Of a stretch of DNA of 64,000 nucleotides, positions 31,996-55,700 are shown piece by piece. Both the position numbers and the translations under genes were made by a program. The notes under the pieces are model-generated. The model was not told the DNA's origin. It made no database searches and worked only from the letters and a program-made list of their open reading frames with translations. Source of the DNA: Blastocladiella emersonii ATCC 22665. Lineage: Eukaryota > Fungi > Blastocladiomycota. Numbering within the stretch: the first letter of the stretch is position 1; each line of letters begins with the position of its first letter. The DNA lies in contig JANHCV010000002.1 in assembly GCA_025594325.1 (NCBI GenBank), positions 2,777,634-2,841,633 of the forward strand. The letters run 5' to 3'.

Positions 31996-32020
31996 CGCGG
32001 TGTGTGCGCGTCTCCCCACA

Positions 32021-32068
32021 ATGGTCGTTCTTGGCACCGAAGCCAGGTTACTAGCCCTTGCGATTTAG
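32021..32068 (+). promoter_or_regulatory. uORF2 of the bZIP gene (MVVLGTEARLLALAI*)
   Basis: ATG at 32021 to TAG at 32068, ending 2 nt before the probable main ATG at 32071. Confidence 0.55.
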
Positions 32069-32070
32069 TT

Positions 32071-33924: not shown

Positions 33925-34069
33925 CGCTTCCCCGGAATAATATGACTACGACCACGTGGTAATCGTTTACTAAATCCTCCAGCCTTCACCCTCAGAACTT
34001 GAATTTTATCCATCAAAGCATTGAGGGCGAGCGCTCAACGGTGGGTGCGTTGCGCGTTAAAGACAAAGT

Positions 34070-37000
34070 CAGTGCTGAAGCGATTTCGTTGGCGGGAAAG
34101 CGCGCCCCTGGCCCATCTGGCATCACGTATCGTTTCCTGCGCGAGTCGGGCCCGCGCGCGCGTGCCGACCTGCTGAGGCTCTTCAACGACATCCTCCGCA
34201 CGGGCGTCGCTCCCGCTCAGTGGCGCGAGGGCTCCATCTACGTGATCCCGAAGACCGACGCGGGGTACACACCGCTGCGGCGATGCGGCCCATCACGCTC
34301 ATGGAGACCGCATCGAAACTGTTTATGAAGATCCTCGTGTCGCGCGTGATGCCCGTCCTCGTTGAGCACGACGTGCTGCGCGGCGCAAAGTACTCTGTTC
34401 TGCCCGGGACAGATACGGCCGTCCCGATCCAGCTCCTCTCGTCTGCCATTGACCATGCCCGCGACTCGGACAAGGCCATGTACGTGTACTTTGAGGACAA
34501 GAGCAAGGCGTTCGACACGGTCCCGCACTCGATCTTGCGGCTGGCCCTGCGCCGCATCCGTCTGCCTGAGCCGTTCGTTGAGTTGTACTGCACGCAGTTC
34601 CTTGAGGGTCGCACATCGCGTGTGATCACCGCGCATGGGCTCACCGAACCGATCCCGTGTCTCCGCGGCGTGCCCCAGGGCGCCGTTGAGTCCCCGCTAA
34701 TGTGGTCCTGTCTCTACGATCCCCTCCTTTGTAACGATATTTCGAAAGGCGCAGATGACGCTTTCCCTCTCCTCCCGTATGCAGGTCGCGGTTCCTTCAA
34801 GTCCGCGCACACTCGGCCTGGTTACACCCCGCCGAGACGCGACCTGCTTGCTTCAGGCCTATCTCGGCGACCCTCATGCCCATCCACAGTGGGGCCCGTG
34901 TGCAGCCTTTCGCACCCGCGAGAGTTACCCACTCAGTGTTGACGACCAAGTTGCCCCACCCATCAACATCCGCGAGGCCTTCACCGCAGGTCTTCGCGTG
35001 ACACAAGTCCCGGCTCAGGCGGGCCCGCTCGACCTCGATCCTGCACTGGTGCCTGTCTACACGGACGGCTCCATGGTGCCAGCTGCGGACGGGGTCGGGT
35101 CGTCCCGCCTTGGAGCGGGCGTGTGGTTCCCGACGCTTGGTGTCCGTCTGTCAGCGCGCGTCTCGCCTGGCGTAGCTTCTTCTACGCGAGCCGAGGCGTG
35201 GGCGATCGCGCTTGCGGTCGCCGCGGCACCACAGCGCTCGCGGATCCACATCTACTCTGACTCCCAGGCTGCCATTGCATCGGCCATCCGCGTCCTATCG
35301 TTCCTTTCCTCCTCCTCGTCTGATTCTGGCTTTCCTTCTTCCCTCAGTTCTACTGACGCATGGTCGTTTGCAGTGGCAGCCGCGCGTGCCCGCCGCGTGA
35401 CCTTCACAATCTCCTGGGTCCGCGGGCACGCCGGCGTTGAGGGGAACGAGATCGCTGACGGGCTCGCCGCTGACGGGATCAATCTGGCCCAAGAGCTCGT
35501 CCTCGCTCCCCCCTTCGCCAAACAGATCCGGTTAGATGTTCAGCATGCGCTGTATTTTGATGACGTCCCCGTTCCCACATCCTCCACTGCACTCCTCAAG
35601 ATCCTGTCCACTGCACGCTGCGATGCGACTATCCGCTCCAAGTCCGCCCTCCTCTCCTTCCTCCACACCTCCCCTGACCCCGATGAGCACCCTGACATGC
35701 TTGCGACCTCACTGGCCATTGGCTCCGGCTCCCGCCCGATCGATAAGCGCACCTCCTGCGCTGCGAACCGCGACATCGTCTATCGCGTTCGCCACCTCCT
35801 TGGGATCACACCCACTCGCTCACTACTGCACGCCCGCCATCCTACTCTAGTCACTTCACCGGTGTGTCCTAGGTGCCAAGTAGCCATTGACGACGGAAGC
35901 CACTGGATGATCTGCACCCGTAACGCCGCGGCCGTGTCCGCCGCGCTGGGCTCTGCCCAAAAGTCCATTGAGCGGTATTCTCGCCGCGCCGCTGCCTCTG
36001 TTGCCGCCGCCGCCGCCGCTACTGCTGCGGCCGCATCCACTGCACGAGCACCGAATGCGCCCACTCCACCTCCACCTCCACCTGCACCACCACCGCCTCT
36101 CTCTCCTGTCCAAGGCGAGGACCTCAGCACGCCCGGCTACGCCATGGTCGGCGAGTCCATTGCTGGCGCAACTGACGCCCTCCACAACTTTGGCACTCGA
36201 CTCGCAGCGTCCATCTGGCGCGACCCCGACGCCCTCTCCCGCCTCGCCGGCTGCGTTCTTCGCGTGCGCGACGTATCGTTCGGCTCGCGGGCCCTCCAAC
36301 TCGACCGCGCCCTCACCCGGCCCGTCCTCGCGGCCATCACCTCCGTGGCCTCGCGCTCCCTCTGGCGACTCGGCTGGCTCCCCCATGCCGCTGGGTGCGC
36401 CGAGGTCGACCCCCTGAACTTTTCCGACGCTCCGCCCCGCGAGGCGAGCGCACGCATTCGACGTCCATTTGGCCAACACGGGGCCACCCTCAAGTTCATC
36501 AACAAACACCACTACTGCGCGCGGTGCTTGCACTCGATGCACTCCCACGCCCCCAACCCCTCTGGGCGTGAAGAAGACCCGCCCGTGTGCCCGCCCACCA
36601 CTGCGGCCCAGGCGGCTCTTGCTGCAGATCCCTCCGCCCGTCTTTGGCTGCTCGGCTCCCCAAGGCACATCCTGAAGTGACAAGTCCGAAGGAACCGCGT
36701 GGTCGTCGCTGAATCATGCCCATCGGTGCATGGGTTGACACAAAAGAAAAGAAAAGAAACGAAAAGAAGAGAAAAGACAAAACAGAAGAAGAAAAAGAAA
36801 AACTGACATTCCTCTCGGGCCACGGCCAAAGCCACAATACTGCTACTGGCTTTCCGGCGTGCCCTCGCTCTCTCGCTGGCCAGCCCAGCATGTCGCCCTG
36901 CTCGGTCTCGATTATTGTTCATTCGCTCCCTCTCTCGCTACTGCTCGTTTGACGCTACTGGTCTGCTTTGCTCCGTCCGTTTGTCCTATCTTTCCTCCCT

Positions 37001-37156
37001 CCCCCACTTCTTCCCCTTTGCTCCTCGACGTGCGTGGTCCAGGCCTTGCTGCATTGCAGCTCTGCCAGAAAAGGCCGGCGCCTGTCGTAAAGTGGATACT
37101 CTGCTTGCAGGTTACAACCGCTGTTAAAGAATAAATCAAAGATTCCACAAGAAAAA
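34070..37156 (+). mobile_element. 5'-truncated, internally deleted non-LTR retrotransposon: RT(partial)-RNase H-CCHC, 3' UTR, AATAAA, short A tail
   Basis: RAPGPSGITY, MRPITLME, EDKSKAFDTV and GVPQGAVESPLMWSCLYDPLL. RNase H motifs VYTDGS, SSTRAEAWAI, IYSDSQAAI and WVRGHAGVEGNEIADGLA. CPRC..D..HWMIC. ORF stop at 36680, AATAAA at ~37130, tail ...caagaaaaa at 37156. Frameshift at ~34280. RT motifs downstream of YDPLL are missing. Confidence 0.92.
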
Positions 37157-37928
37157 GTTTGAGTACCTTGACAATTATGTACGAGGCTGGTTTACTATCT
37201 TTCCGTTGTCAAATATTTAGTTGGGTCGATACTGTGATTTATGGGTCCCTGGCTAGCTGGACAAGCGTGTAGTCAAAGATTTGAATATGGTTTTGTTCGA
37301 CTACCATGACAATTGTCTACGTGGCTGGTTTGGTACGGCCCTATCATCGGTCAATTCATTGCGTGCATATTGTGATTCGTGGAGGGTCCGATTGGGCCGG
37401 ACATCCCCCTCTCTGCTGTCCAGACTACGTTCCATGAAATACATGATCCATTGCGTGAGCAACGTTCCTAGCTTGCCCGCCCGCATGCGCGCTACGTCCG
37501 CCCACCCACCCACCCACCTAGGCCAGACAGGAAGGAAAGGGGACCCCAAGAGCCCCACGACACCACTTTAGCTCCACTACCACCCGCCAAGGCGCACGCA
37601 GCGACACCCGCAGCCATGCCATGGCGTTGGTGGGTGGATGGTGGCCAGCCAATCCTCATCACGCACGACACGTATGAAGGTCTGCCTGCATCCACCCATC
37701 CATTCATTCAACACACCCTCCCTCACGCACCCCTTCACTCGTGCTGTTTGACAGCCAGCTAGCCAGGTCCTGCTGCTGCTACCTATCTACCCTGCCCGCC
37801 TCCCACGCCCGCCGCGTCCTGAGCCAGGCAGGGCTGTGCTGCGATTAATGGCCGCGGCCAGTCCACGGTATTGGTACCCATGCAGTACGTTCCATGGCCG
37901 CCCGGCCACCCTAGCTTGGTGCTTGTGT

Positions 37929-38006
37929 GTCACTTGGTCACCTTGGTCACCGTGGTCACCTTGGTCACCTTGGTCACTTGGTCACCTTGGTCACTTGGTC
38001 ACTTGG
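37929..38006. repeat. (TTGGTCAC[C])n 8/9-bp microsatellite, present in every 3328-bp unit
   Basis: About 9 copies by direct inspection. Confidence 0.9.
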
Positions 38007-38600
38007 CGCTTGTGATGGAGGTCTAATCCAGGCACGCACGGACACAGGCACGCACGGACACAGGCCCGCACGCCCACACGCTCTCCTGCCAGGAGCATGT
38101 GGTGTGTGGGTCATTCACCATTCAGTTTGTCGTCCCTAGCACTCCTTGGCCCCAGCACTGTCTCCTTCCTGCAGCAGGAGCCCTGCCGCCTCAGCCCTCC
38201 GCAGCCAGCCCTCTGCAGCCCTGTGAAGCAGTACGGCTGCTACGCTGTTTCCAAGGTACGGTGGCCAGGGCGACGCAGGTGCTGTGGTGTTGCTTGCCAC
38301 TTGGCTGGCAACAGGGGCTGGCGCACCCATCAATCAATCAGCGGCACCGGGAGGGCAGGCAGGCGCACCCGTTGGAGCGAGTAGCAAGCCTGGATGATAA
38401 ATCATTGTTGAGTTGAGGACGCCTTGCATGCCTGCCGTTCATGCGAGTGTGTGTGACACCAGGGTGGCCGTTTGCGCCGTGTGCGCACCGCGGGGTGCGT
38501 CGGGCGCTGTGTGCTGTGCGCGCTGCACGGTGCGCGGTGTACGTCCGTCAGCGGGTGAGTGGTTTCACGCGGATAGACAGAGGAGCTGCTCGGAACCCTC

Positions 38601-39254
38601 TTTATTTTGGAACCAATGCATTTATTCCTTAACTGCGGTTGTGAACTGCAACCAGAATATCCACTGTGCAACGGGCAGCAGCCTTTTTGTGGGCAAGCCG
38701 CAGTACGACAAGCCCGGACCGTGCACGTCGAGGAGCATAGGGGGAAGAATTGTGGGAGGAGAGGGGAGTACGAGAGAGATGGGCGAACGAGGCGAAGAGA
38801 GAGCGAGCTCGAGCAGCGAGCTAAGAGAGCGAACGAAGAGCAGTAAAGAGAGACCGAGCAGAGAGACACGCTGGCGTGACCAGCTAGAGCGCGAGGACAT
38901 GCCAATGGACCAGTGGCAGTGCTGTGGTATTGGGCATGGCCTGTGAGGTTCGTCAGATGTTTTTCCATCTTTTTGTGCGGACGTTCTTCTTGTTGCGTTT
39001 CTCTTTATTTTGTTTTTCTCCTTCTTTTTCTTTTTCTTTTGTGCGTCAGCGCCATTCAGTGGCGGATCATGCGTTTCATCGTGGTCAGAACGAGAGAAAG
39101 TGGATGGGTCAGTACCGCGCGCAAACACCTGGTGCCACTGGACTTGCGTCGACTGCGCCGATCCTTGGTCTAGTCACATCACCGAATGTGCCTTGGGGAA
39201 CCGAGCAACCAAAGTCGGACGGAGGGATCTGCAACAAGAGCCGCTTGGGCCGCG
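38601..39254 (-). mobile_element. 654-bp 5'-truncated LINE copy (end of ORF + 3' UTR + A-rich tail) with a 16-bp TSD; repeated in every unit
   Basis: The reverse complement aligns with 36603-37156 (AAQAALVADPSVRLWLLGSPRHIR* versus AAQAALAADPSARLWLLGSPRHILK*; shared acaaccgc.gttaa.gaataaat). It is flanked by the direct repeat GCTGCTCGGAACCCTC at 38585-38600 and 39255-39270. Confidence 0.92.
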
Positions 39255-39545
39255 GCTGCTCGGAACCCTCCTTGGCCCATCATCATGCAGGACTTGGAGT
39301 GGACAGCAGAGCCGGCAGCCAGGAGGAGACTGGTCGTGTATTGACTAACAAAGTCGTCCCAGACTACCTACGAGATAGATAATATCTACTGGGTGGGCGC
39401 TGTCAGTCAGGCTGTCAGTGTGGCAGGCTGCCAGGCTGCCAGGGCTCATCATTCATTCGTTTGTTGGCTGGGACGGCAACCAGAGAGCGCGGGCCCCCAA
39501 TGACTTGCGAGGCGGTGTGGGTGTTCGGATAGCAGGTAGGCAAGG

Positions 39546-39620
39546 TGGCAGGTTGACAGGTTGGCAGGTTGGCAGGCTGGCAGGCTGGCAGGCTGGCAGG
39601 TTGGCAGGCTGGCAGGTTGG
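39546..39620. repeat. (GGCAGGYT)n 8-bp microsatellite, present in every unit
   Basis: About 9 copies by direct inspection. Confidence 0.9.
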
Positions 39621-39713
39621 CTGTTTACTTAGTTGATTGGACCGTGCACTTTGACGACGGGCTCCATTATTAGGGGATCGAAGAGTTGGCTAGTGGAGTG
39701 TGCACAAAGCGGT

Positions 39714-40720
39714 AGATTTGAATATCTGGCGCTTTGGTTCCTCGCCCACCTGGACGTGAGGGTATGCGAAGATTTGGCTGAGTATGGTTATGTTTGAGTA
39801 CCATGACAATTATCAGCGTGGCGGGTTTGATACATCCCGATCGTCAGTCAGGTGTTTTCTTGGTTCAATACTGTGATTTATAGGCCCTTGCCCACCTGGA
39901 CATGGGGCACTCGAAGATTTGACTATGGTTTTGTTTGAGTACCATGACAATTATCTACGTGCCTGGTTTACGATATTTCTTTGGTCAGATATTGCGTTGC
40001 TGTGATACTGTGATTTATGGGTCCCTGGCTAGCTGGACAAGCGGGAAGTGAAAGATTTGAATATGGTTTTGTTTGAGTATCAAGACAATTACCTACGCGG
40101 TCGGTTATATAAACTCATGTGGTCAGATATTTCGTTGGTATGATACTGTGATTTATGGGTGTCCAACCTGCTGGACATGTGGGAAGTCGAAGATTTGAGT
40201 ATGGTTTTGTTTGAGTACCATGACAGTTGCCAGAGTGGCTGGTTTACTATACTTCTATGGTCAGATATACTGTTGCTTTGACGTTACGATTTATGGGTCC
40301 TCAACCAGCTGGACATGCAGGAAAGCAAAGATTTGAATATGGTTTTGATTGAGTACCATGACAATTATCCGCGTGGCTGTTTTACCATATTTCTGTCGTC
40401 AGATACTTTGTTGGTTCGATACTGTGATTTATGGGTCCCTGGCCAGCTGGACATGCGGGAAGTCAAGGTTTTGAATATGGTTTTGTTTGAGTACCATGAC
40501 AATTATGTACGAGGCTGGTTTACTATCTTTCCGTTGTCAAATATTTAGTTGGGTCGATACTGTGATTTATGGGTCCCTGGCTAGCTGGACAAGCGTGTAG
40601 TCAAAGATTTGAATATGGTTTTGTTCGACTACCATGACAATTGTCTACGTGGCTGGTTTGGTACGGCCCTATCATCGGTCAATTCATTGCGTGCATATTG
40701 TGATTCGTGGAGGGTCCGAT
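39714..40720. repeat. Nested array of ~7 diverged AT-rich 138-bp monomers, present in every unit
   Basis: The motif (g/a)aagatttgaatatggttttgtttgagtaccatgacaatt recurs at 39768, 39913, 40051, 40189, 40327, 40465 and 40603 (exact 138-bp spacing for the last six), plus a truncated copy at ~39714. Confidence 0.95.
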
Positions 40721-43700
40721 TGGGCCGGACATCCCCCTCTCTGCTGTCCAGACTACGTTCCATGAAATACATGATCCATTGCGTGAGCAACGTTCCTAGC
40801 TTGCCCGCCCGCATGCGCGCTACGTCCGCCCACCCACCCACCCACCTAGGCCAGACAGGAAGGAAAGGGGACCCCAAGAGCCCCACGACACCACTTTAGC
40901 TCCACTACCACCCGCCAAGGCGCACGCAGCGACACCCGCAGCCATGCCATGGCGTTGGTGGGTGGATGGTGGCCAGCCAATCCTCATCACGCACGACACG
41001 TATGAAGGTCTGCCTGCATCCACCCATCCATTCATTCAACACACCCTCCCTCACGCACCCCTTCACTCGTGCTGTTTGACAGCCAGCTAGCCAGGTCCTG
41101 CTGCTGCTACCTATCTACCCTGCCCGCCTCCCACGCCCGCCGCGTCCTGAGCCAGGCAGGGCTGTGCTGCGATTAATGGCCGCGGCCAGTCCACGGTAGT
41201 GGTACCCATGCAGTACGTTCCATGGCCGCCCGGCCACCCTAGCTTGGTGCTTGTGTGTCACTTGGTCACCTTGGTCACCGTGGTCACCTTGGTCACCTTG
41301 GTCACTTGGTCACCTTGGTCACTTGGTCACTTGGCGCTTGTGATGGAGGTCTAATCCAGGCACGCACGGACACAGGCACGCACGGACACAGGCCCGCACG
41401 CCCACACGCTCTCCTGCCAGGAGCATGTGGTGTGTGGGTCATTCACCATTCAGTTTGTCGTCCCTAGCACTCCTTGGCCCCAGCACTGTCTCCTTCCTGC
41501 AGCAGGAGCCCTGCCGCCTCAGCCCTCCGCAGCCAGCCCTCTGCAGCCCTGTGAAGCAGTACGGCTGCTACGCTGTTTCCAAGGTACGGTGGCCAGGGCG
41601 ACGCAGGTGCTGTGGTGTTGCTTGCCACTTGGCTGGCAACAGGGGCTGGCGCACCCATCAATCAATCAACGGCACCGGGAGGGCAGGCAGGCGCACCCGT
41701 TGGAGCGAGTAGCAAGCCTGGATGATAAATCATTGTTGAGTTGAGGACGCCTTGCATGCCTGCCGTTCATGCGAGTGTGTGTGACACCAGGGTGGCCGTT
41801 TGCGCCGTGTGCGCACCGCGGGGTGCGTCGGGCGCTGTGTGCTGTGCGCGCTGCACGGTGCGCGGTGTACGTCCGTCAGCGGGTGAGTGGTTTCACGCGG
41901 ATAGACAGAGGAGCTGCTCGGAACCCTCTTTATTTTGGAACCAATGCATTTATTCCTTAACTGCGGTTGTGAACTGCAACCAGAATATCCACTGTGCAAC
42001 GGGCAGCAGCCTTTTTGTGGGCAAGCCGCAGTACGACAAGCCCGGACCGTGCACGTCGAGGAGCATAGGGGGAAGAATTGTGGGAGGAGAGGGGAGTACG
42101 AGAGAGATGGGCGAACGAGGCGAAGAGAGAGCGAGCTCGAGCAGCGAGCTAAGAGAGCGAACGAAGAGCAGTAAAGAGAGACCGAGCAGAGAGACACGCT
42201 GGCGTGACCAGCTAGAGCGCGAGGACATGCCAATGGACCAGTGGCAGTGCTGTGGTATTGGGCATGGCCTGTGAGGTTCGTCAGATGTTTTTCCATCTTT
42301 TTGTGCGGACGTTCTTCTTGTTGCGTTTCTCTTTATTTTGTTTTTCTCCTTCTTTTTCTTTTTCTTTTGTGCGTCAGCGCCATTCAGTGGCGGATCATGC
42401 GTTTCATCGTGGTCAGAACGAGAGAAAGTGGATGGGTCAGTACCGCGCGCAAACACCTGGTGCCACTGGACTTGCGTCGACTGCGCCGATCCTTGGTCTA
42501 GTCACATCACCGAATGTGCCTTGGGGAACCGAGCAACCAAAGTCGGACGGAGGGATCTGCAACAAGAGCCGCTTGGGCCGCGGCTGCTCGGAACCCTCCT
42601 TGGCCCATCATCATGCAGGACTTGGAGTGGACAGCAGAGCCGGCAGCCAGGAGGAGACTGGTCGTGTATTGACTAACAAAGTCGTCCCAGACTACCTACG
42701 AGATAGATAATATCTACTGGGTGGGCGCTGTCAGTCAGGCTGTCAGTGTGGCAGGCTGCCAGGCTGCCAGGGCTCATCATTCATTCGTTTGTTGGCTGGG
42801 ACGGCAACCAGAGAGCGCGGGCCCCCAATGACTTGCGAGGCGGTGTGGGTGTTCGGATAGCAGGTAGGCAAGGTGGCAGGTTGACAGGTTGGCAGGTTGG
42901 CAGGCTGGCAGGCTGGCAGGCTGGCAGGTTGGCAGGCTGGCAGGTTGGCTGTTTACTTAGTTGATTGGACCGTGCACTTTGACGACGGGCTCCATTATTA
43001 GGGGATCGAAGAGTTGGCTAGTGGAGTGTGCACAAAGCGGTAGATTTGAATATCTGGCGCTTTGGTTCCTCGCCCACCTGGACGTGAGGGTATGCGAAGA
43101 TTTGGCTGAGTATGGTTATGTTTGAGTACCATGACAATTATCAGCGTGGCGGGTTTGATACGTCCCGATCGTCAGTCAGGTGTTTTCTTGGTTCAATACT
43201 GTGATTTATAGGCCCTTGCCCACCTGGACATGGGGCACTCGAAGATTTGACTATGGTTTTGTTTGAGTACCATGACAATTATCTACGTGCCTGGTTTACG
43301 ATATTTCTTTGGTCAGATATTGCGTTGCTGTGATACTGTGATTTATGGGTCCCTGGCTAGCTGGACAAGCGGGAAGTGAAAGATTTGAATATGGTTTTGT
43401 TTGAGTATCAAGACAATTACCTACGCGGTCGGTATTATATAAACTCATGTGGTCAGATATTTCGTTGGTATGATACTGTGATTTATGGGTGTCCAACCTG
43501 CTGGACATGTGGGAAGTCGAAGATTTGAGTATGGTTTTGTTTGAGTACCATGACAGTTGCCAGAGTGGCTGGTTTACTATACTTCTATGGTCAGATATAC
43601 TGTTGCTTTGACGTTACGATTTATGGGTCCTCAACCAGCTGGACATGCAGGAAAGCAAAGATTTGAATATGGTTTTGATTGAGTACCATGACAATTATCC

Positions 43701-46700
43701 GCGTGGCTGTTTTACCATATTTCTGTCGTCAGATACTTTGTTGGTTCGATACTGTGATTTATGGGTCCCTGGCCAGCTGGACATGCGGGAAGTCAAGGTT
43801 TTGAATATGGTTTTGTTTGAGTACCATGACAATTATGTACGAGGCTGGTTTACTATCTTTCCGTTGTCAAATATTTAGTTGGGTCGATACTGTGATTTAT
43901 GGGTCCCTGGCTAGCTGGACAAGCGTGTAGTCAAAGATTTGAATATGGTTTTGTTCGACTACCATGACAATTGTCTACGTGGCTGGTTTGGTACGGCCCT
44001 ATCATCGGTCAATTCATTGCGTGCATATTGTGATTCGTGGAGGGTCCGATTGGGCCGGACATCCCCCTCTCTGCTGTCCAGACTACGTTCCATGAAATAC
44101 ATGATCCATTGCGTGAGCAACGTTCCTAGCTTGCCCGCCCGCATGCGCGCTACGTCCGCCCACCCACCCACCCACCTAGGCCAGACAGGAAGGAAAGGGG
44201 ACCCCAAGAGCCCCACGACACCACTTTAGCTCCACTACCACCCGCCAAGGCGCACGCAGCGACACCCGCAGCCATGCCATGGCGTTGGTGGGTGGATGGT
44301 GGCCAGCCAATCCTCATCACGCACGACACGTATGAAGGTCTGCCTGCATCCACCCATCCATTCATTCAACACACCCTCCCTCACGCACCCCTTCACTCGT
44401 GCTGTTTGACAGCCAGCTAGCCAGGTCCTGCTGCTGCTACCTATCTACCCTGCCCGCCTCCCACGCCCGCCGCGTCCTGAGCCAGGCAGGGCTGTGCTGC
44501 GATTAATGGCCGCGGCCAGTCCACGGTATTGGTACCCATGCAGTACGTTCCATGGCCGCCCGGCCACCCTAGCTTGGTGCTTGTGTGTCACTTGGTCACC
44601 TTGGTCACCGTGGTCACCTTGGTCACCTTGGTCACTTGGTCACCTTGGTCACTTGGTCACTTGGCGCTTGTGATGGAGGTCTAATCCAGGCACGCACGGA
44701 CACAGGCACGCACGGACACAGGCCCGCACGCCCACACGCTCTCCTGCCAGGAGCATGTGGTGTGTGGGTCATTCACCATTCAGTTTGTCGTCCCTAGCAC
44801 TCCTTGGCCCCAGCACTGTCTCCTTCCTGCAGCAGGAGCCCTGCCGCCTCAGCCCTCCGCAGCCAGCCCTCTGCAGCCCTGTGAAGCAGTACGGCTGCTA
44901 CGCTGTTTCCAAGGTACGGTGGCCAGGGCGACGCAGGTGCTGTGGTGTTGCTTGCCACTTGGCTGGCAACAGGGGCTGGCGCACCCATCAATCAATCAGC
45001 GGCACCGGGAGGGCAGGCAGGCGCACCCGTTGGAGCGAGTAGCAAGCCTGGATGATAAATCATTGTTGAGTTGAGGACGCCTTGCATGCCTGCCGTTCAT
45101 GCGAGTGTGTGTGACACCAGGGTGGCCGTTTGCGCCGTGTGCGCACCGCGGGGTGCGTCGGGCGCTGTGTGCTGTGCGCGCTGCACGGTGCGCGGTGTAC
45201 GTCCGTCAGCGGGTAAGTGGTTTCACGCGGATAGACCGAGGAGCTGCTCGGAACCCTCTTTATTTTGGAACCAATGCATTTATTCCTTAACTGCGGTTGT
45301 GAACTGCAACCAGAATATCCACTGTGCAACGGGCAGCAGCCTTTTTGTGGGCAAGCCGCAGTACGACAAGCCCGGACCGTGCACGTCGAGGAGCATAGGG
45401 GGAAGAATTGTGGGAGGAGAGGGGAGTACGAGAGAGATGGGCGAACGAGGCGAAGAGAGAGCGAGCTCGAGCAGCGAGCTAAGAGAGCGAACGAAGAGCA
45501 GTAAAGAGAGACCGAGCAGAGAGACACGCTGGCGTGACCAGCTAGAGCGCGAGGACATGCCAATGGACCAGTGGCAGTGCTGTGGTATTGGGCATGGCCT
45601 GTGAGGTTCGTCAGATGTTTTTCCATCTTTTTGTGCGGACGTTCTTCTTGTTGCGTTTCTCTTTATTTTGTTTTTCTCCTTCTTTTTCTTTTTCTTTTGT
45701 GCGTCAGCGCCATTCAGTGGCGGATCATGCGTTTCATCGTGGTCAGAACGAGAGAAAGTGGATGGGTCAGTACCGCGCGCAAACACCTGGTGCCACTGGA
45801 CTTGCGTCGACTGCGCCGATCCTTGGTCTAGTCACATCACCGAATGTGCCTTGGGGAACCGAGCAACCAAAGTCGGACGGAGGGATCTGCAACAAGAGCC
45901 GCTTGGGCCGCGGCTGCTCGGAACCCTCCTTGGCCCATCATCATGCAGGACTTGGAGTGGACAGCAGAGCCGGCAGCCAGGAGGAGACTGGTCGTGTATT
46001 GACTAACAAAGTCGTCCCAGACTACCTACGAGATAGATAATATCTACTGGGTGGGCGCTGTCAGTCAGGCTGTCAGTGTGGCAGGCTGCCAGGCTGCCAG
46101 GGCTCATCATTCATTCGTTTGTTGGCTGGGACGGCAACCAGAGAGCGCGGGCCCCCAATGACTTGCGAGGCGGTGTGGGTGTTCGGATAGCAGGTAGGCA
46201 AGGTGGCAGGTTGACAGGTTGGCAGGTTGGCAGGCTGGCAGGCTGGCAGGCTGGCAGGTTGGCAGGCTGGCAGGTTGGCTGTTTACTTAGTTGATTGGAC
46301 CGTGCACTTTGACGACGGGCTCCATTATTAGGGGATCGAAGAGTTGGCTAGTGGAGTGTGCACAAAGCGGTAGATTTGAATATCTGGCGCTTTGGTTCCT
46401 CGCCCACCTGGACGTGAGGGTATGCGAAGATTTGGCTGAGTATGGTTATGTTTGAGTACCATGACAATTATCAGCGTGGCGGGTTTGATACGTCCCGATC
46501 GTCAGTCAGGTGTTTTCTTGGTTCAATACTGTGATTTATAGGCCCTTGCCCACCTGGACATGGGGCACTCGAAGATTTGACTATGGTTTTGTTTGAGTAC
46601 CATGACAATTATCTACGTGCCTGGTTTACGATATTTCTTTGGTCAGATATTGCGTTGCTGTGATACTGTGATTTATGGGTCCCTGGCTAGCTGGACAAGC

Positions 46701-49700
46701 GGGAAGTGAAAGATTTGAATATGGTTTTGTTTGAGTATCAAGACAATTACCTACGCGGTCGGTTATATATACTCATGTGGTCAGATATTTCGTTGGTATG
46801 ATACTGTGATTTATGGGTGTCCAACCTGCTGGACATGTGGGAAGTCGAAGATTTGAGTATGGTTTTGTTTGAGTACCATGACAGTTGCCAGAGTGGCTGG
46901 TTTACTATACTTCTATGGTCAGATATACTGTTGCTTTGACGTTACGATTTATGGGTCCTCAACCAGCTGGACATGCAGGAAAGCAAAGATTTGAATATGG
47001 TTTTGATTGAGTACCATGACAATTATCCGCGTGGCTGTTTTACCATATTTCTGTCGTCAGATACTTTGTTGGTTCGATACTGTGATTTATGGGTCCCTGG
47101 CCAGCTGGACATGCGGGAAGTCAAGGTTTTGAATATGGTTTTGTTTGAGTACCATGACAATTATGTACGAGGCTGGTTTACTATCTTTCCGTTGTCAAAT
47201 ATTTAGTTGGGTCGATACTGTGATTTATGGGTCCCTGGCTAGCTGGACAAGCGTGTAGTCAAAGATTTGAATATGGTTTTGTTCGACTACCATGACAATT
47301 GTCTACGTGGCTGGTTTGGTACGGCCCTATCATCGGTCAATTCATTGCGTGCGTATTGTGATTCGTGGAGGGTCCGATTGGGCCGGACATCCCCCTCTCT
47401 GCTGTCCAGACTACGTTCCATGAAATACATGATCCATTGCGTGAGCAACGTTCCTAGCTTGCCCGCCCGCATGCGCGCTACGTCCGCCCACCCACCCACC
47501 CACCTAGGCCAGACAGGAAGGAAAGGGGACCCCAAGAGCCCCACGACACCACTTTAGCTCCACTACCACCCGCCAAGGCGCACGCAGCGACACCCGCAGC
47601 CATGCCATGGCGTTGGTGGGTGGATGGTGGCCAGCCAATCCTCATCACGCACGACACGTATGAAGGTCTGCCTGCATCCACCCATCCATTCATTCAACAC
47701 ACCCTCCCTCACGCACCCCTTCACTCGTGCTGTTTGACAGCCAGCTAGCCAGGTCCTGCTGCTGCTACCTATCTACCCTGCCCGCCTCCCACGCCCGCCG
47801 CGTCCTGAGCCAGGCAGGGCTGTGCTGCGATTAATGGCCGCGGCCAGTCCACGGTATTGGTACCCATGCAGTACGTTCCATGGCCGCCCGGCCACCCTAG
47901 CTTGGTGCTTGTGTGTCACTTGGTCACCTTGGTCACCGTGGTCACCTTGGTCACCTTGGTCACTTGGTCACCTTGGTCACTTGGTCACTTGGCGCTTGTG
48001 ATGGAGGTCTAATCCAGGCACGCACGGACACAGGCACGCACGGACACAGGCCCGCACGCCCACACGCTCTCCTGCCAGGAGCATGTGGTGTGTGGGTCAT
48101 TCACCATTCAGTTTGTCGTCCCTAGCACTCCTTGGCCCCAGCACTGTCTCCTTCCTGCAGCAGGAGCCCTGCCGCCTCAGCCCTCCGCAGCCAGCCCTCT
48201 GCAGCCCTGTGAAGCAGTACGGCTGCTACGCTGTTTCCAAGGTACGGTGGCCAGGGCGACGCAGGTGCTGTGGTGTTGCTTGCCACTTGGCTGGCAACAG
48301 GGGCTGGCGCACCCATCAATCAATCAACGGCACCGGGAGGGCAGGCAGGCGCACCCGTTGGAGCGAGTAGCAAGCCTGGATGATAAATCATTGTTGAGTT
48401 GAGGACGCCTTGCATGCCTGCCGTTCATGCGAGTGTGTGTGACACCAGGGTGGCCGTTTGCGCCGTGTGCGCACCGCGGGGTGCGTCGGGCGCTGTGTGC
48501 TGTGCGCGCTGCACGGTGCGCGGTGTACGTCCGTCAGCGGGTAAGTGGTTTCACGCGGATAGACCGAGGAGCTGCTCGGAACCCTCTTTATTTTGGAACC
48601 AATGCATTTATTCCTTAACTGCGGTTGTGAACTGCAACCAGAATATCCACTGTGCAACGGGCAGCAGCCTTTTTGTGGGCAAGCCGCAGTACGACAAGCC
48701 CGGACCGTGCACGTCGAGGAGCATAGGGGGAAGAATTGTGGGAGGAGAGGGGAGTACGAGAGAGATGGGCGAACGAGGCGAAGAGAGAGCGAGCTCGAGC
48801 AGCGAGCTAAGAGAGCGAACGAAGAGCAGTAAAGAGAGACCGAGCAGAGAGACACGCTGGCGTGACCAGCTAGAGCGCGAGGACATGCCAATGGACCAGT
48901 GGCAGTGCTGTGGTATTGGGCATGGCCTGTGAGGTTCGTCAGATGTTTTTCCATCTTTTTGTGCGGACGTTCTTCTTGTTGCGTTTCTCTTTATTTTGTT
49001 TTTCTCCTTCTTTTTCTTTTTCTTTTGTGCGTCAGCGCCATTCAGTGGCGGATCATGCGTTTCATCGTGGTCAGAACGAGAGAAAGTGGATGGGTCAGTA
49101 CCGCGCGCAAACACCTGGTGCCACTGGACTTGCGTCGACTGCGCCGATCCTTGGTCTAGTCACATCACCGAATGTGCCTTGGGGAACCGAGCAACCAAAG
49201 TCGGACGGAGGGATCTGCAACAAGAGCCGCTTGGGCCGCGGCTGCTCGGAACCCTCCTTGGCCCATCATCATGCAGGACTTGGAGTGGACAGCAGAGCCG
49301 GCAGCCAGGAGGAGACTGGTCGTGTATTGACTAACAAAGTCGTCCCAGACTACCTACGAGATAGATAATATCTACTGGGTGGGCGCTGTCAGTCAGGCTG
49401 TCAGTGTGGCAGGCTGCCAGGCTGCCAGGGCTCATCATTCATTCGTTTGTTGGCTGGGACGGCAACCAGAGAGCGCGGGCCCCCAATGACTTGCGAGGCG
49501 GTGTGGGTGTTCGGATAGCAGGTAGGCAAGGTGGCAGGTTGACAGGTTGGCAGGTTGGCAGGCTGGCAGGCTGGCAGGCTGGCAGGTTGGCAGGCTGGCA
49601 GGTTGGCTGTTTACTTAGTTGATTGGACCGTGCACTTTGACGACGGGCTCCATTATTAGGGGATCGAAGAGTTGGCTAGTGGAGTGTGCACAAAGCGGTA

Positions 49701-52700
49701 GATTTGAATATCTGGCGCTTTGGTTCCTCGCCCACCTGGACGTGAGGGTATGCGAAGATTTGGCTGAGTATGGTTATGTTTGAGTACCATGACAATTATC
49801 AGCGTGGCGGGTTTGATACGTCCCGATCGTCAGTCAGGTGTTTTCTTGGTTCAATACTGTGATTTATAGGCCCTTGCCCACCTGGACATGGGGCACTCGA
49901 AGATTTGACTATGGTTTTGTTTGAGTACCATGACAATTATCTACGTGCCTGGTTTACGATATTTCTTTGGTCAGATATTGCGTTGCTGTGATACTGTGAT
50001 TTATGGGTCCCTGGCTAGCTGGACAAGCGGGAAGTGAAAGATTTGAATATGGTTTTGTTTGAGTATCAAGACAATTACCTACGCGGTCGGTTATATATAC
50101 TCATGTGGTCAGATATTTCGTTGGTATGATACTGTGATTTATGGGTGTCCAACCTGCTGGACATGTGGGAAGTCGAAGATTTGAGTATGGTTTTGTTTGA
50201 GTACCATGACAGTTGCCAGAGTGGCTGGTTTACTATACTTCTATGGTCAGATATACTGTTGCTTTGACGTTACGATTTATGGGTCCTCAACCAGCTGGAC
50301 ATGCAGGAAAGCAAAGATTTGAATATGGTTTTGATTGAGTACCATGACAATTATCCGCGTGGCTGTTTTACCATATTTCTGTCGTCAGATACTTTGTTGG
50401 TTCGATACTGTGATTTATGGGTCCCTGGCCAGCTGGACATGCGGGAAGTCAAGGTTTTGAATATGGTTTTGTTTGAGTACCATGACAATTATGTACGAGG
50501 CTGGTTTACTATCTTTCCGTTGTCAAATATTTAGTTGGGTCGATACTGTGATTTATGGGTCCCTGGCTAGCTGGACAAGCGTGTAGTCAAAGATTTGAAT
50601 ATGGTTTTGTTCGACTACCATGACAATTGTCTACGTGGCTGGTTTGGTACGGCCCTATCATCGGTCAATTCATTGCGTGCGTATTGTGATTCGTGGAGGG
50701 TCCGATTGGGCCGGACATCCCCCTCTCTGCTGTCCAGACTACGTTCCATGAAATACATGATCCATTGCGTGAGCAACGTTCCTAGCTTGCCCGCCCGCAT
50801 GCGCGCTACGTCCGCCCACCCACCCACCCACCTAGGCCAGACAGGAAGGAAAGGGGACCCCAAGAGCCCCACGACACCACTTTAGCTCCACTACCACCCG
50901 CCAAGGCGCACGCAGCGACACCCGCAGCCATGCCATGGCGTTGGTGGGTGGATGGTGGCCAGCCAATCCTCATCACGCACGACACGTATGAAGGTCTGCC
51001 TGCATCCACCCATCCATTCATTCAACACACCCTCCCTCACGCACCCCTTCACTCGTGCTGTTTGACAGCCAGCTAGCCAGGTCCTGCTGCTGCTACCTAT
51101 CTACCCTGCCCGCCTCCCACGCCCGCCGCGTCCTGAGCCAGGCAGGGCTGTGCTGCGATTAATGGCCGCGGCCAGTCCACGGTATTGGTACCCATGCAGT
51201 ACGTTCCATGGCCGCCCGGCCACCCTAGCTTGGTGCTTGTGTGTCACTTGGTCACCTTGGTCACCGTGGTCACCTTGGTCACCTTGGTCACTTGGTCACC
51301 TTGGTCACTTGGTCACTTGGCGCTTGTGATGGAGGTCTAATCCAGGCACGCACGGACACAGGCACGCACGGACACAGGCCCGCACGCCCACACGCTCTCC
51401 TGCCAGGAGCATGTGGTGTGTGGGTCATTCACCATTCAGTTTGTCGTCCCTAGCACTCCTTGGCCCCAGCACTGTCTCCTTCCTGCAGCAGGAGCCCTGC
51501 CGCCTCAGCCCTCCGCAGCCAGCCCTCTGCAGCCCTGTGAAGCAGTACGGCTGCTACGCTGTTTCCAAGGTACGGTGGCCAGGGCGACGCAGGTGCTGTG
51601 GTGTTGCTTGCCACTTGGCTGGCAACAGGGGCTGGCGCACCCATCAATCAATCAACGGCACCGGGAGGGCAGGCAGGCGCACCCGTTGGAGCGAGTAGCA
51701 AGCCTGGATGATAAATCATTGTTGAGTTGAGGACGCCTTGCATGCCTGCCGTTCATGCGAGTGTGTGTGACACCAGGGTGGCCGTTTGCGCCGTGTGCGC
51801 ACCGCGGGGTGCGTCGGGCGCTGTGTGCTGTGCGCGCTGCACGGTGCGCGGTGTACGTCCGTCAGCGGGTAAGTGGTTTCACGCGGATAGACCGAGGAGC
51901 TGCTCGGAACCCTCTTTATTTTGGAACCAATGCATTTATTCCTTAACTGCGGTTGTGAACTGCAACCAGAATATCCACTGTGCAACGGGCAGCAGCCTTT
52001 TTGTGGGCAAGCCGCAGTACGACAAGCCCGGACCGTGCACGTCGAGGAGCATAGGGGGAAGAATTGTGGGAGGAGAGGGGAGTACGAGAGAGATGGGCGA
52101 ACGAGGCGAAGAGAGAGCGAGCTCGAGCAGCGAGCTAAGAGAGCGAACGAAGAGCAGTAAAGAGAGACCGAGCAGAGAGACACGCTGGCGTGACCAGCTA
52201 GAGCGCGAGGACATGCCAATGGACCAGTGGCAGTGCTGTGGTATTGGGCATGGCCTGTGAGGTTCGTCAGATGTTTTTCCATCTTTTTGTGCGGACGTTC
52301 TTCTTGTTGCGTTTCTCTTTATTTTGTTTTTCTCCTTCTTTTTCTTTTTCTTTTGTGCGTCAGCGCCATTCAGTGGCGGATCATGCGTTTCATCGTGGTC
52401 AGAACGAGAGAAAGTGGATGGGTCAGTACCGCGCGCAAACACCTGGTGCCACTGGACTTGCGTCGACTGCGCCGATCCTTGGTCTAGTCACATCACCGAA
52501 TGTGCCTTGGGGAACCGAGCAACCAAAGTCGGACGGAGGGATCTGCAACAAGAGCCGCTTGGGCCGCGGCTGCTCGGAACCCTCCTTGGCCCATCATCAT
52601 GCAGGACTTGGAGTGGACAGCAGAGCCGGCAGCCAGGAGGAGACTGGTCGTGTATTGACTAACAAAGTCGTCCCAGACTACCTACGAGATAGATAATATC

Positions 52701-55700
52701 TACTGGGTGGGCGCTGTCAGTCAGGCTGTCAGTGTGGCAGGCTGCCAGGCTGCCAGGGCTCATCATTCATTCGTTTGTTGGCTGGGACGGCAACCAGAGA
52801 GCGCGGGCCCCCAATGACTTGCGAGGCGGTGTGGGTGTTCGGATAGCAGGTAGGCAAGGTGGCAGGTTGACAGGTTGGCAGGTTGGCAGGCTGGCAGGCT
52901 GGCAGGCTGGCAGGTTGGCAGGCTGGCAGGTTGGCTGTTTACTTAGTTGATTGGACCGTGCACTTTGACGACGGGCTCCATTATTAGGGGATCGAAGAGT
53001 TGGCTAGTGGAGTGTGCACAAAGCGGTAGATTTGAATATCTGGCGCTTTGGTTCCTCGCCCACCTGGACGTGAGGGTATGCGAAGATTTGGCTGAGTATG
53101 GTTATGTTTGAGTACCATGACAATTATCAGCGTGGCGGGTTTGATACATCCCGATCGTCAGTCAGGTGTTTTCTTGGTTCAATACTGTGATTTATAGGCC
53201 CTTGCCCACCTGGACATGGGGCACTCGAAGATTTGACTATGGTTTTGTTTGAGTACCATGACAATTATCTACGTGCCTGGTTTACGATATTTCTTTGGTC
53301 AGATATTGCGTTGCTGTGATACTGTGATTTATGGGTCCCTGGCTAGCTGGACAAGCGGGAAGTGAAAGATTTGAATATGGTTTTGTTTGAGTATCAAGAC
53401 AATTACCTACGCGGTCGGTTATATATACTCATGTGGTCAGATATTTCGTTGGTTTGATACTGTGATTTATGGGTGTCCAACCTGCTGGACATGTGGGAAG
53501 TCGAAGATTTGAGTATGGTTTTGTTTGAGTACCATGACAGTTGCCAGAGTGGCTGGTTTACTATACTTCTATGGTCAGATATACTGTTGCTTTGACGTTA
53601 CGATTTATGGGTCCTCAACCAGCTGGACATGCAGGAAAGCAAAGATTTGAATATGGTTTTGATTGAGTACCATGACAATTATCCGCGTGGCTGTTTTACC
53701 ATATTTCTGTCGTCAGATACTTTGTTGGTTCGATACTGTGATTTATGGGTCCCTGGCCAGCTGGACATGCGGGAAGTCAAGGTTTTGAATATGGTTTTGT
53801 TTGAGTACCATGACAATTATGTACGAGGCTGGTTTACTATCTTTCCGTTGTCAAATATTTAGTTGGGTCGATACTGTGATTTATGGGTCCCTGGCTAGCT
53901 GGACAAGCGTGTAGTCAAAGATTTGAATATGGTTTTGTTCGACTACCATGACAATTGTCTACGTGGCTGGTTTGGTACGGCCCTATCATCGGTCAATTCA
54001 TTGCGTGCGTATTGTGATTCGTGGAGGGTCCGATTGGGCCGGACATCCCCCTCTCTGCTGTCCAGACTACGTTCCATGAAATACATGATCCATTGCGTGA
54101 GCAACGTTCCTAGCTTGCCCGCCCGCATGCGCGCTACGTCCGCCCACCCACCCACCCACCTAGGCCAGACAGGAAGGAAAGGGGACCCCAAGAGCCCCAC
54201 GACACCACTTTAGCTCCACTACCACCCGCCAAGGCGCACGCAGCGACACCCGCAGCCATGCCATGGCGTTGGTGGGTGGATGGTGGCCAGCCAATCCTCA
54301 TCACGCACGACACGTATGAAGGTCTGCCTGCATCCACCCATCCATTCATTCAACACACCCTCCCTCACGCACCCCTTCACTCGTGCTGTTTGACAGCCAG
54401 CTAGCCAGGTCCTGCTGCTGCTACCTATCTACCCTGCCCGCCTCCCACGCCCGCCGCGTCCTGAGCCAGGCAGGGCTGTGCTGCGATTAATGGCCGCGGC
54501 CAGTCCACGGTATTGGTACCCATGCAGTACGTTCCATGGCCGCCCGGCCACCCTAGCTTGGTGCTTGTGTGTCACTTGGTCACCTTGGTCACCGTGGTCA
54601 CCTTGGTCACCTTGGTCACTTGGTCACCTTGGTCACTTGGTCACTTGGCGCTTGTGATGGAGGTCTAATCCAGGCACGCACGGACACAGGCACGCACGGA
54701 CACAGGCCCGCACGCCCACACGCTCTCCTGCCAGGAGCATGTGGTGTGTGGGTCATTCACCATTCAGTTTGTCGTCCCTAGCACTCCTTGGCCCCAGCAC
54801 TGTCTCCTTCCTGCAGCAGGAGCCCTGCCGCCTCAGCCCTCCGCAGCCAGCCCTCTGCAGCCCTGTGAAGCAGTACGGCTGCTACGCTGTTTCCAAGGTA
54901 CGGTGGCCAGGGCGACGCAGGTGCTGTGGTGTTGCTTGCCACTTGGCTGGCAACAGGGGCTGGCGCACCCATCAATCAATCAACGGCACCGGGAGGGCAG
55001 GCAGGCGCACCCGTTGGAGCGAGTAGCAAGCCTGGATGATAAATCATTGTTGAGTTGAGGACGCCTTGCATGCCTGCCGTTCATGCGAGTGTGTGTGACA
55101 CCAGGGTGGCCGTTTGCGCCGTGTGCGCACCGCGGGGTGCGTCGGGCGCTGTGTGCTGTGCGCGCTGCACGGTGCGCGGTGTACGTCCGTCAGCGGGTAA
55201 GTGGTTTCACGCGGATAGACCGGGGAGCTGCTCGGAACCCTCTTTATTTTGGAACCAATGCATTTATTCCTTAACTGCGGTTGTGAACTGCAACCAGAAT
55301 ATCCACTGTGCAACGGGCAGCAGCCTTTTTGTGGGCAAGCCGCAGTACGACAAGCCCGGACCGTGCACGTCGAGGAGCATAGGGGGAAGAATTGTGGGAG
55401 GAGAGGGGAGTACGAGAGAGATGGGCGAACGAGGCGAAGAGAGAGCGAGCTCGAGCAGCGAGCTAAGAGAGCGAACGAAGAGCAGTAAAGAGAGACCGAG
55501 CAGAGAGACACGCTGGCGTGACCAGCTAGAGCGCGAGGACATGCCAATGGACCAGTGGCAGTGCTGTGGTATTGGGCATGGCCTGTGAGGTTCGTCAGAT
55601 GTTTTTCCATCTTTTTGTGCGGACGTTCTTCTTTTTGCGTTTCTCTTTATTTTGTTTTTCTCCTTCTTTTTCTTTTTCTTTTGTGCGTCAGCGCCATTCA

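What the first reader, a model, noticed from the sequence alone, without database searches (positions are those of the whole stretch)
38585..39270. Every array unit carries an antisense LINE 3' end with a perfect 16-bp TSD
Seen: GCTGCTCGGAACCCTC flanks a 654-bp 5'-truncated copy whose A-rich tail (TTTATTTT on +) abuts the left repeat. This is the hallmark of target-primed reverse transcription and shows the insertion predates array amplification. Inference: at least 8 identical copies of the family's 3' end (the part needed for RT recognition) embedded in a tandem array could act as a small-RNA source or 'TE trap' against this LINE family, analogous to piRNA clusters. Alternatively they are passive cargo.
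Basis: partly seen in the sequence, partly recalled or inferred. Interest (0 to 1): 0.75.

Follow-up and report, generated by a model that had tools for sequence, protein, structure and literature searches.

The report
LINE scar copied through satellite array
One broken-off tail of a jumping gene (a LINE) landed once in a 2.66-kb non-coding repeat of a water fungus and was then copied into every repeat of that chromosome's array; this is a known kind of event, and nothing yet shows that the copies silence the LINE.

Summary
All 8 units in the window carry a 654-bp, 5'-truncated, antisense LINE 3' end (last 24 codons, 3' UTR, short A-rich tail) between perfect 16-bp repeats. Sixteen more such units lie on contig C10, the other half of the same array.

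The duplication is a true target-site duplication. The uninterrupted site occurs 179 times in sister arrays on other contigs (C17, C2, C4, C5).

The C17 array carries an independent 1250-bp copy of the same LINE subfamily, with a 17-bp duplication at another site, and that site is empty in all 8 window units.

So the repeat family predates the insertion. The insertion predates the last homogenisation of this one chromosome-internal array.

61 of the 65 genomic copies of this subfamily's 3' terminus sit in these two arrays. LINE copies also cap the array edges.

The small-RNA or 'TE trap' idea remains untested:
- Four Argonaute genes exist.
- No two-domain Dicer and no RdRP were detected.
- Only one TE family is present.
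- No strong inverted repeat exists.

Passive hitch-hiking is the best reading.

The scan had already found this on other windows of this genome (s1-076348, s1-265236, s1-292498).

The parts
38585..38600 (+). Left copy of the 16-bp target-site duplication in unit 1. The same 16-mer starts at 41913, 45243, 48571, 51899, 55227, 58555 and 61887.
   Evidence: A single copy with continuous flanks is present in the empty units of other arrays.
38601..39254 (-). 654-bp 5'-truncated LINE 3' end of the B-type subfamily. A-rich tail 38601-38608; 3' UTR about 38609-39178; last 24 codons plus stop of the LINE ORF 39179-39253.
   Evidence: It is 96.3-96.5% identical to the C17 and C20 copies.
39255..39270 (+). 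Right copy of the 16-bp target-site duplication in unit 1. The same 16-mer starts at 42583, 45913, 49241, 52569, 55897, 59225 and 62560.
41913..62575 (-). Span holding the seven further TSD-flanked copies of the same insert: 41913-42598, 45243-45928, 48571-49256, 51899-52584, 55227-55912, 58555-59240 and 61887-62575.
   Evidence: Across all 24 copies only 8 of 689 alignment columns vary.
37158..64000 (+). Non-coding macrosatellite array: a 2658-bp basic unit plus the 670-bp insert gives 3328 bp. It includes 6.4 monomers of 138 bp per unit. It runs off the contig end.
   Evidence: No Pfam domain, no Rfam family and no tRNA.
33999..37157 (+). 5'-truncated A-type LINE (RT, RNase H, CCHC) capping the left array edge. 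Its tail abuts a 138-bp monomer. It has a 1050-bp internal deletion at 34838/34839 relative to the C10 copy.
37371..37387 (+). Single copy of the 17-mer TGTGATTCGTGGAGGGT, the empty site of the independent LINE insertion fixed in the C17 array. It also starts at 40699, 44029, 47357, 50685, 54013, 57341 and 60669.

Best explanation
A LINE encoding an AP-type endonuclease, a reverse transcriptase and an RNase H nicked one unit of a pre-existing 2.66-kb non-coding macrosatellite. It primed reverse transcription at its A-rich tail, stopped 654 nt in (5' truncation), and left a 16-bp target-site duplication.

Unequal exchange or gene conversion inside the array then carried that unit variant to fixation in the whole array of this chromosome, which spans the C11 end and C10. 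The fragment is most probably passive cargo: a time-stamp of array turnover with no function of its own.

Its one demonstrable consequence is that it offers homology for exchange with other LINE copies, as seen at the C10 edge.

Shown: the insertion, the TSD, the empty sites, fixation in every unit, a parallel independent event on C17, and the association of the LINE with the arrays. Inferred: the spreading mechanism and the neutrality.
For: TSD and insert are present in 8 of 8 window units, in 16 complete C10 units and in 1 edge unit.

Empty sites occur 179 times in sister arrays: C17 exact, C2, C4 and C5 with 1 mismatch. The alignment shows the flanks are contiguous there.

The reciprocal case holds. 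All 36 C17 units carry the B-type 3' terminus at one-unit spacing, and the 1250-bp copy with its perfect 17-bp TSD was read in the fetched units. That site is single-copy in all 8 window units.

Two long copies with the same 3' terminus carry an AP-type endonuclease (PF03372) and an RNase H region in long open frames; the RT domain was confirmed on other copies of the family.

Insert spacing is always one unit, so no unit escaped. Copies differ at only 8 of 689 columns and all 48 TSD copies are perfect. Unit ORFs have no Pfam domain.

The array is chromosome-internal. Telomere repeats lie at C11:30-95, 2.8 Mb away, and genes follow the array on C10.
Against: Neutrality is not demonstrated. A LINE-bearing variant reached complete fixation in two arrays independently. 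Both inserts have the same orientation relative to the unit. 61 of 65 genomic copies of this 3' terminus are array copies. Four intact-looking Argonaute genes exist. No RNA data could be consulted.
Confidence: 0.75

Rival explanations
1. Small-RNA source or 'TE trap': the array is transcribed, and the 25 or more (plus 36 on C17) embedded LINE 3' ends yield RNAs complementary to LINE mRNA. These feed Argonaute and silence the few long copies, analogous to piRNA clusters or to the RNAi-silenced pericentric Grem-LINE1 elements of Mucor.
For: Four Piwi-domain genes score 298-308 bits in open frames of 759-1111 aa. 94% of this subfamily's 3' termini sit in arrays and only four lie outside. Both intra-unit inserts share one orientation. 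In Mucor, pericentric LINEs are silenced by Dicer-dependent small RNAs (10.1101/706580).
Against: No transcription or small-RNA data are available. Only one single-domain RNase III gene was found, with no Dicer dimerisation domain and no RdRP, although the control genomes were silent for the last two. Each array holds one event from one TE family, not an accumulation of diverse TEs. The only inverted partner is the A-type LINE upstream, with arms of 50-115 nt at 73-91% complementarity. Fixation is what array homogenisation does to any variant that is not lost.
Confidence: 0.12
2. Array-homing LINE: the family preferentially nicks or is retained in the satellite arrays, which are candidate centromeres. 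The intra-unit copies are by-products of that targeting, and LINE sequence may contribute to array-edge formation or chromatin.
For: LINE copies sit at the array edges on C11, C10, C17, C20 and C4, with the tail pointing into the array at all five. C5 probably has one too, and C2 holds fragments. Two of six independent B-type loci are inside array units and a third is at the C20 edge. The C10 edge copy is a mosaic that continues the terminal insert into a longer LINE.
Against: The two TSDs and their flanks share no clear nick-site motif. The centromere identity of the arrays is untested. Retention bias in gene-poor DNA could mimic targeting. This reading is compatible with passive cargo for the fragment itself.
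Confidence: 0.1
3. Pseudo-TSD: the 16-bp repeat is not a target-site duplication. It would be the by-product of a tandem duplication whose breakpoints fell 16 bp from the tail of the long LINE now at the C10 edge and 654 nt into that LINE.
For: The C10 edge unit has the same 16-mer and tail junction but continues into a LINE about 3.9 kb long with no second 16-mer.
Against: The breakpoint would have to fall by chance within a TSD-sized distance, about 14 of 2658 positions or 0.5%. The independent C17 event has a 17-bp TSD of the same size class. The edge LINE is itself a mosaic, switching from A-type to B-type 918 nt from its end, which points to secondary exchange.
Confidence: 0.02

Closest known systems
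5'-truncated LINE insertions made by target-primed reverse transcription (L1-type hallmarks; from general knowledge)
   Same: A 3' end with an A-rich tail at one junction, 5' truncation, a 16-17-bp TSD, and autonomous relatives with an AP-type endonuclease and RT.
   Different: The short tail (8-13 nt) contains non-A bases. The nick sites are GC-rich and unlike the L1 TTTT/AA site. The element carries RNase H. Its clade was not determined.
Composite satellites and macrosatellites that amplified an embedded transposon fragment (from general knowledge; not checked in a paper here)
   Same: One insertion with its junctions is copied in every unit, and homogenisation is chromosome-specific.
   Different: The host is a blastocladiomycete fungus. 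Two sister arrays each fixed an independent insertion of the same LINE subfamily and serve as each other's empty site.
Grem-LINE1 of Mucor circinelloides (10.1101/706580)
   Same: A low-copy LINE family found almost only in gene-free (peri)centromere-type regions and at non-telomeric scaffold ends of an early-diverging fungus. In Mucor it is silenced by RNAi.
   Different: Grem-LINE1 has zinc fingers, AP endonuclease, RT and zf-RVT but no RNase H. Mucor pericentromeres are not tandem satellites. In Mucor, small RNAs and kinetochore binding are measured; here neither is.
Animal piRNA clusters, trap model (from general knowledge)
   Same: A TE fragment sits in a heterochromatin-like repeat locus and could give complementary RNA.
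   Different: There is one family and one event per array, not many TE families. No PIWI pathway is known in fungi. There is no evidence of transcription.

Membership tests
LINE insertion by target-primed reverse transcription | Sequence is the 3' end of a non-LTR retrotransposon (ORF end plus 3' UTR) | tested here: met
   83% and 71% identity to the RT/RNase H LINE in the window. 96-100% identity to other copies, with the ORF end conserved.
LINE insertion by target-primed reverse transcription | A-rich tail at the 3' junction | tested here: met
   The tail is AAAATAAA, preceded by AATAAA 26 nt upstream. The C17 copy ends in A10GAA.
LINE insertion by target-primed reverse transcription | Target-site duplication, proven by an uninterrupted empty site | tested here: met
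   Perfect 16-mers flank all 24 copies. There are 179 empty sites with continuous flanks.
LINE insertion by target-primed reverse transcription | Autonomous family members with endonuclease and reverse transcriptase | tested here: met
   RVT_1 and RNase_H domains. Exo_endo_phos lies next to RNase H regions in long open frames at C11:2228172-2233397 and C21:503976-509147, which carry the same 3' terminus.
Small-RNA-generating TE trap (piRNA-cluster-like or siRNA locus) | Locus is transcribed and yields small RNAs | not testable with these tools
   No RNA-seq or small-RNA data can be reached. The genome paper does not mention transposons or centromeres.
Small-RNA-generating TE trap (piRNA-cluster-like or siRNA locus) | Silencing machinery is present | tested here: inconclusive
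   Four Piwi-domain genes. One single-domain RNase III gene only. Dicer_dimer and RdRP were not found, but the controls were silent.
Small-RNA-generating TE trap (piRNA-cluster-like or siRNA locus) | Accumulation of fragments from many insertions or TE families | tested here: not met
   One event per array. The C2/C5 and C4 arrays have none. The rest of the unit has no protein-domain hit.
Centromere-associated LINE (Grem-LINE1-like) | Copies confined to centromeric regions | tested here: inconclusive
   61 of 65 B-type 3' termini are in arrays, and edges are capped by LINEs. The centromere identity of the arrays is unproven.
Centromere-associated LINE (Grem-LINE1-like) | Same element family or domain set as Grem-LINE1 | tested here: not met
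   RNase H is present here. The Grem-LINE1 domain list has none.

The most novel reading that the evidence does not exclude
The chromosome-internal satellite arrays of this fungus are homing and retention sites for one LINE family. The 61 array-borne 3' ends, transcribed with the array, would guide Argonautes against the few long copies. This would be a fungal, satellite-based counterpart of a piRNA-cluster trap, working without a canonical Dicer or RdRP.
Probability: 0.1. Interest if true: 0.7.

Novelty: new member of a known kind. Interest (0 to 1): 0.38.

Why it matters
The insert is a clean molecular time-stamp. The repeat family is older than the insertion, yet every unit of one chromosome's array carries it with flawless TSDs. 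A sister array fixed a different insertion of the same LINE. Together they show fast, chromosome-specific turnover of arrays that other sessions of this scan propose as satellite-type centromeres, a type those sessions found unreported in the fungal centromere papers they searched.

The result also gives simple PCR or long-read markers (filled versus empty sites) for dating that turnover across isolates. It defines exactly which 654 nt to inspect in small-RNA data to settle the silencing idea.

Tried and rejected
- Rfam and tRNA scans of the unit found nothing.
- Pfam on all unit ORFs found nothing above threshold.
- I searched for a shared endonuclease nick motif between the two TSD sites and found none convincing.
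- A 9-nt identity (GCTGCTCGG) between the TSD and a LINE segment near the ORF end has a chance expectation of about 0.04, so I do not treat it as meaningful.
- A 3'-terminal RNA structure was tested. RNAalifold on four sequences from two subfamilies gives only 3 compensatory pairs and a covariation term of -0.44, too weak to claim an RT-recognition fold.
- LINE clade assignment failed. The PDB search gave only weak hits to an RT-like protein (8gh6, E = 2.6e-5). The Atlas gave generic RNase_H/zf-RVT clusters.
- A simple-recombinant reading of the C10 edge LINE was rejected. B-type sequence extends 264 nt beyond the truncation point, so the history is more complex.
The two long copies and the C7 copy were therefore not read.
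- The large protein searches were not used. The family scans settled the protein identity.

Full report
**1. Observation**

The 16-mer GCTGCTCGGAACCCTC occurs 16 times in the window. All copies are on the + strand and lie in pairs 670-673 bp apart, with about 0.01 matches expected by chance. The pairs recur every 3328-3332 bp. They lie in a tandem array that starts at 37158 and runs to the window end.

Between the first pair lie exactly 654 bp (38601-39254), and TTTATTTT abuts the left repeat. The eight copies are 99.6-100% identical.

The insert is reverse-complementary to the 3' end of a 5'-truncated LINE on the + strand at 33999-37157. That LINE has RVT_1 and RNase_H domains and a CCHC motif. 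Read in LINE sense, the insert holds:
- the last 24 codons of the ORF and its stop;
- about 570 nt of 3' UTR with a purine-rich tract;
- AATAAA 26 nt from the end;
- the tail AAAATAAA.

LINE homology begins 1-2 nt after the right 16-mer and ends at the left one.

**2. The TSD is real: empty sites**

The window is G000:C11:2777634-2841633 and its end is the contig end. I searched the whole genome for ten bases of left flank, one 16-mer and ten bases of right flank. This gave 179 matches, against 0 for the reversed control pattern:
- 36 exact matches on C17, period about 4.1 kb;
- matches with one mismatch on C2 (period 3124), C4 (period 2766) and C5 (periods 3124 and 3148);
- 79 further matches not listed.

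Alignment of fetched units shows the flanks are contiguous there and the 654 bp plus one 16-mer are missing. No empty site exists in the window or in the C10 array.

A rival reading holds that the 16-bp repeat comes from a tandem-duplication breakpoint. That would need the breakpoint to fall by chance about 16 bp from the LINE tail, roughly 0.5% of unit positions. I reject it.

**3. Extent of the filled variant**

The same filled unit occurs on C10:156583-213278 in the opposite orientation. It runs to that contig's end (C10 is 213,278 bp). C11 and C10 are therefore best read as the two halves of one array, with at least 83 kb assembled.

There are 8 + 16 complete TSD-flanked copies and one edge copy. 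Successive copies are always one unit apart (3305-3362 bp), so no unit lacks the insert. Across the 24 copies only 8 of 689 alignment columns vary, and all 48 TSD copies are perfect. Unit-length sub-variants (3362, 3328, 3311 bp) occur in blocks, as local unequal exchange would produce.

**4. A reciprocal, independent event**

Every C17 unit is empty at the 16-mer site. At another place in the unit it carries a 1250-bp copy of the same LINE subfamily. I call this subfamily B-type; the C17 copy is 96.3% identical to the C11 insert. It has the same orientation relative to the unit, ends in A10GAA, and is flanked by a perfect 17-bp duplication, TGTGATTCGTGGAGGGT. The 5' junction is present in 30 of 30 fetched C17 units.

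All eight window units have that 17-mer once, with continuous flanks. C2/C5 units have a diverged empty version, and the site was not found in the fetched C4 units (L063).

The non-LINE parts of the C11 and C17 units are 92-95% identical. The order of events is therefore:
- the repeat family and its chromosome-specific arrays came first;
- two separate LINE insertions followed;
- each variant then swept through its own array.

**5. The LINE family and its link to the arrays**

A protein search of the genome with the RNase H/C-terminal ORF finds about 20-25 loci outside array units. LINE copies lie at the array edges on C11 (window), C10, C17, C20 and C4, and in all five the tail points into the array. 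C5 probably has one as well, and C2 holds fragments.

Two long copies combine an AP-type endonuclease hit with the RNase H region in open frames of 1666-2479 aa, each with one in-frame TGA in the region tested:
- C11:2228172-2233397;
- C21:503976-509147.

Both end in the B-type 3' terminus.

A census of that 29-nt terminus, allowing up to 3 mismatches, gives 65 copies: 17 on C10, 8 in the C11 array, 36 on C17, and only four elsewhere. So 94% of this subfamily's 3' ends stem from two insertion events multiplied by the arrays.

**6. The C10 edge**

The last unit on C10 has the left 16-mer and the same tail. The LINE then continues 5'-ward for about 3.9 kb into gene DNA, with a protein kinase ORF just upstream and no second 16-mer. 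Measured from its 3' end, this LINE is a mosaic:
- 99-100% identical to the window's A-type LINE from -2317 to -918;
- then 98-99% B-type;
- 100% identical to the insert over the last about 600 nt.

I infer exchange or gene conversion between the terminal insert and longer LINE copies. The exact history is unresolved, because B-type sequence extends 264 nt beyond the truncation point. This is the one demonstrable effect of the inserts: they are substrates for ectopic exchange.

**7. Context**

- The unit has no Rfam family, tRNA or Pfam-bearing ORF.
- Perfect telomere runs (AAACCT, at least 10 repeats) lie at C11:30-95 and C2:223-546. These are the contig ends opposite the arrays.
- Genes follow the array on C10, so the array is chromosome-internal.
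- The published B. emersonii ATCC 22665 assembly has 21 contigs and the same telomere motif, and its paper never mentions transposons or centromeres.
- Earlier notes of this scan name the organism and propose the arrays as satellite-type centromeres. I tested only the contig count, the telomere motif and the internal position.

**8. The silencing hypothesis**

For:
- four Piwi-domain genes at 298-308 bits in open frames;
- the dominance of array-borne 3' ends;
- the same orientation of both inserts;
- the precedent of RNAi-silenced pericentric Grem-LINE1 in Mucor.

Against, or missing:
- no RNA data;
- only one single-domain RNase III gene;
- no Dicer dimerisation domain and no RdRP, although the control genomes were silent for both, so absence is not proven;
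- one TE family and one event per array;
- the only inverted partner of the insert is the A-type LINE upstream, with arms of 50-115 nt at 73-91% complementarity;
- complete fixation is the normal fate of any array variant that is not lost.

I put the trap idea at about 0.12 and passive hitch-hiking at about 0.75.

**9. Comparison and verdict**

The feature meets every tested criterion of a TPRT insertion. It belongs to the known class of transposon fragments amplified inside satellites. It resembles Grem-LINE1 in genomic habit but is not a member of that family, because it has RNase H.

It is a new member of a known kind. The scan had already reported the same event on other windows (s1-076348, s1-265236) and the C17 event with an unidentified source (s1-292498).
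- the reciprocal empty-site proof;
- the identification of the C17 insert as the same LINE subfamily;
- the 61-of-65 census;
- the mosaic edge copy;
- the RNAi gene inventory.

Noticed in passing
window 34838-34839: The window's edge LINE lacks 1050 bp of RT-region sequence that is present in the C10 edge copy (L066:5771-6821). This is an internal deletion.
   Followed up: partly
window 34838-36240 versus L066:6921-8320: The two LINEs that cap the opposite edges of the same array lie in inverted orientation. They are 99-100% identical over about 1.4 kb but differ completely in their last 918 nt. This suggests gene conversion across the array.
   Followed up: partly
window 33924-33999: The edge LINE begins only 75 bp after the stop codon of a GCN4-like bZIP gene (32002-33924, +). 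The gene's 3' UTR or read-through transcripts could run into the LINE and the array.
   Followed up: no
window 39196-39210 and 39255-39270: The TSD shares 9 consecutive bases (GCTGCTCGG; about 12 of 14 overall) with a segment of the LINE's sense strand near its ORF end, as seen in the C17 and C20 copies. In the insert this gives a short imperfect inverted repeat. The chance expectation is about 0.04.
   Followed up: partly
G000 genome-wide (C17:1404132, C17:1586553, C11:2504843, C20:476549; C1:2959691-2960185): There are four Argonaute (Piwi-domain) genes but only one single-domain RNase III gene, with no RdRP or Dicer dimerisation domain detectable by six-frame HMM search. The RNAi gene set is unusual if this holds.
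   Followed up: partly
L065:7180-9480 and L026:3356-3649 (C20 array edge): A B-type LINE is flanked 5' by 138-bp monomers and 3' by the interior of an A-type LINE. The A-type tail abuts 138-bp monomers in inverted orientation. It is a nested or rearranged pile-up without simple TSDs.
   Followed up: partly
G000:C11:2228172-2233397 and G000:C21:503976-509147: Both long endonuclease/RNase H copies show one in-frame TGA within the region homologous to the RNase H/C-terminal ORF. Whether it lies at the same position in both could not be checked.
   Followed up: no
G000:C10:157205-210652: Unit-length variants occur in runs, by insert spacing: 3320, then 3362 x7, 3320, 3362, 3311, 3328, 3311 x4. This is a footprint of local unequal exchange.
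   Followed up: no
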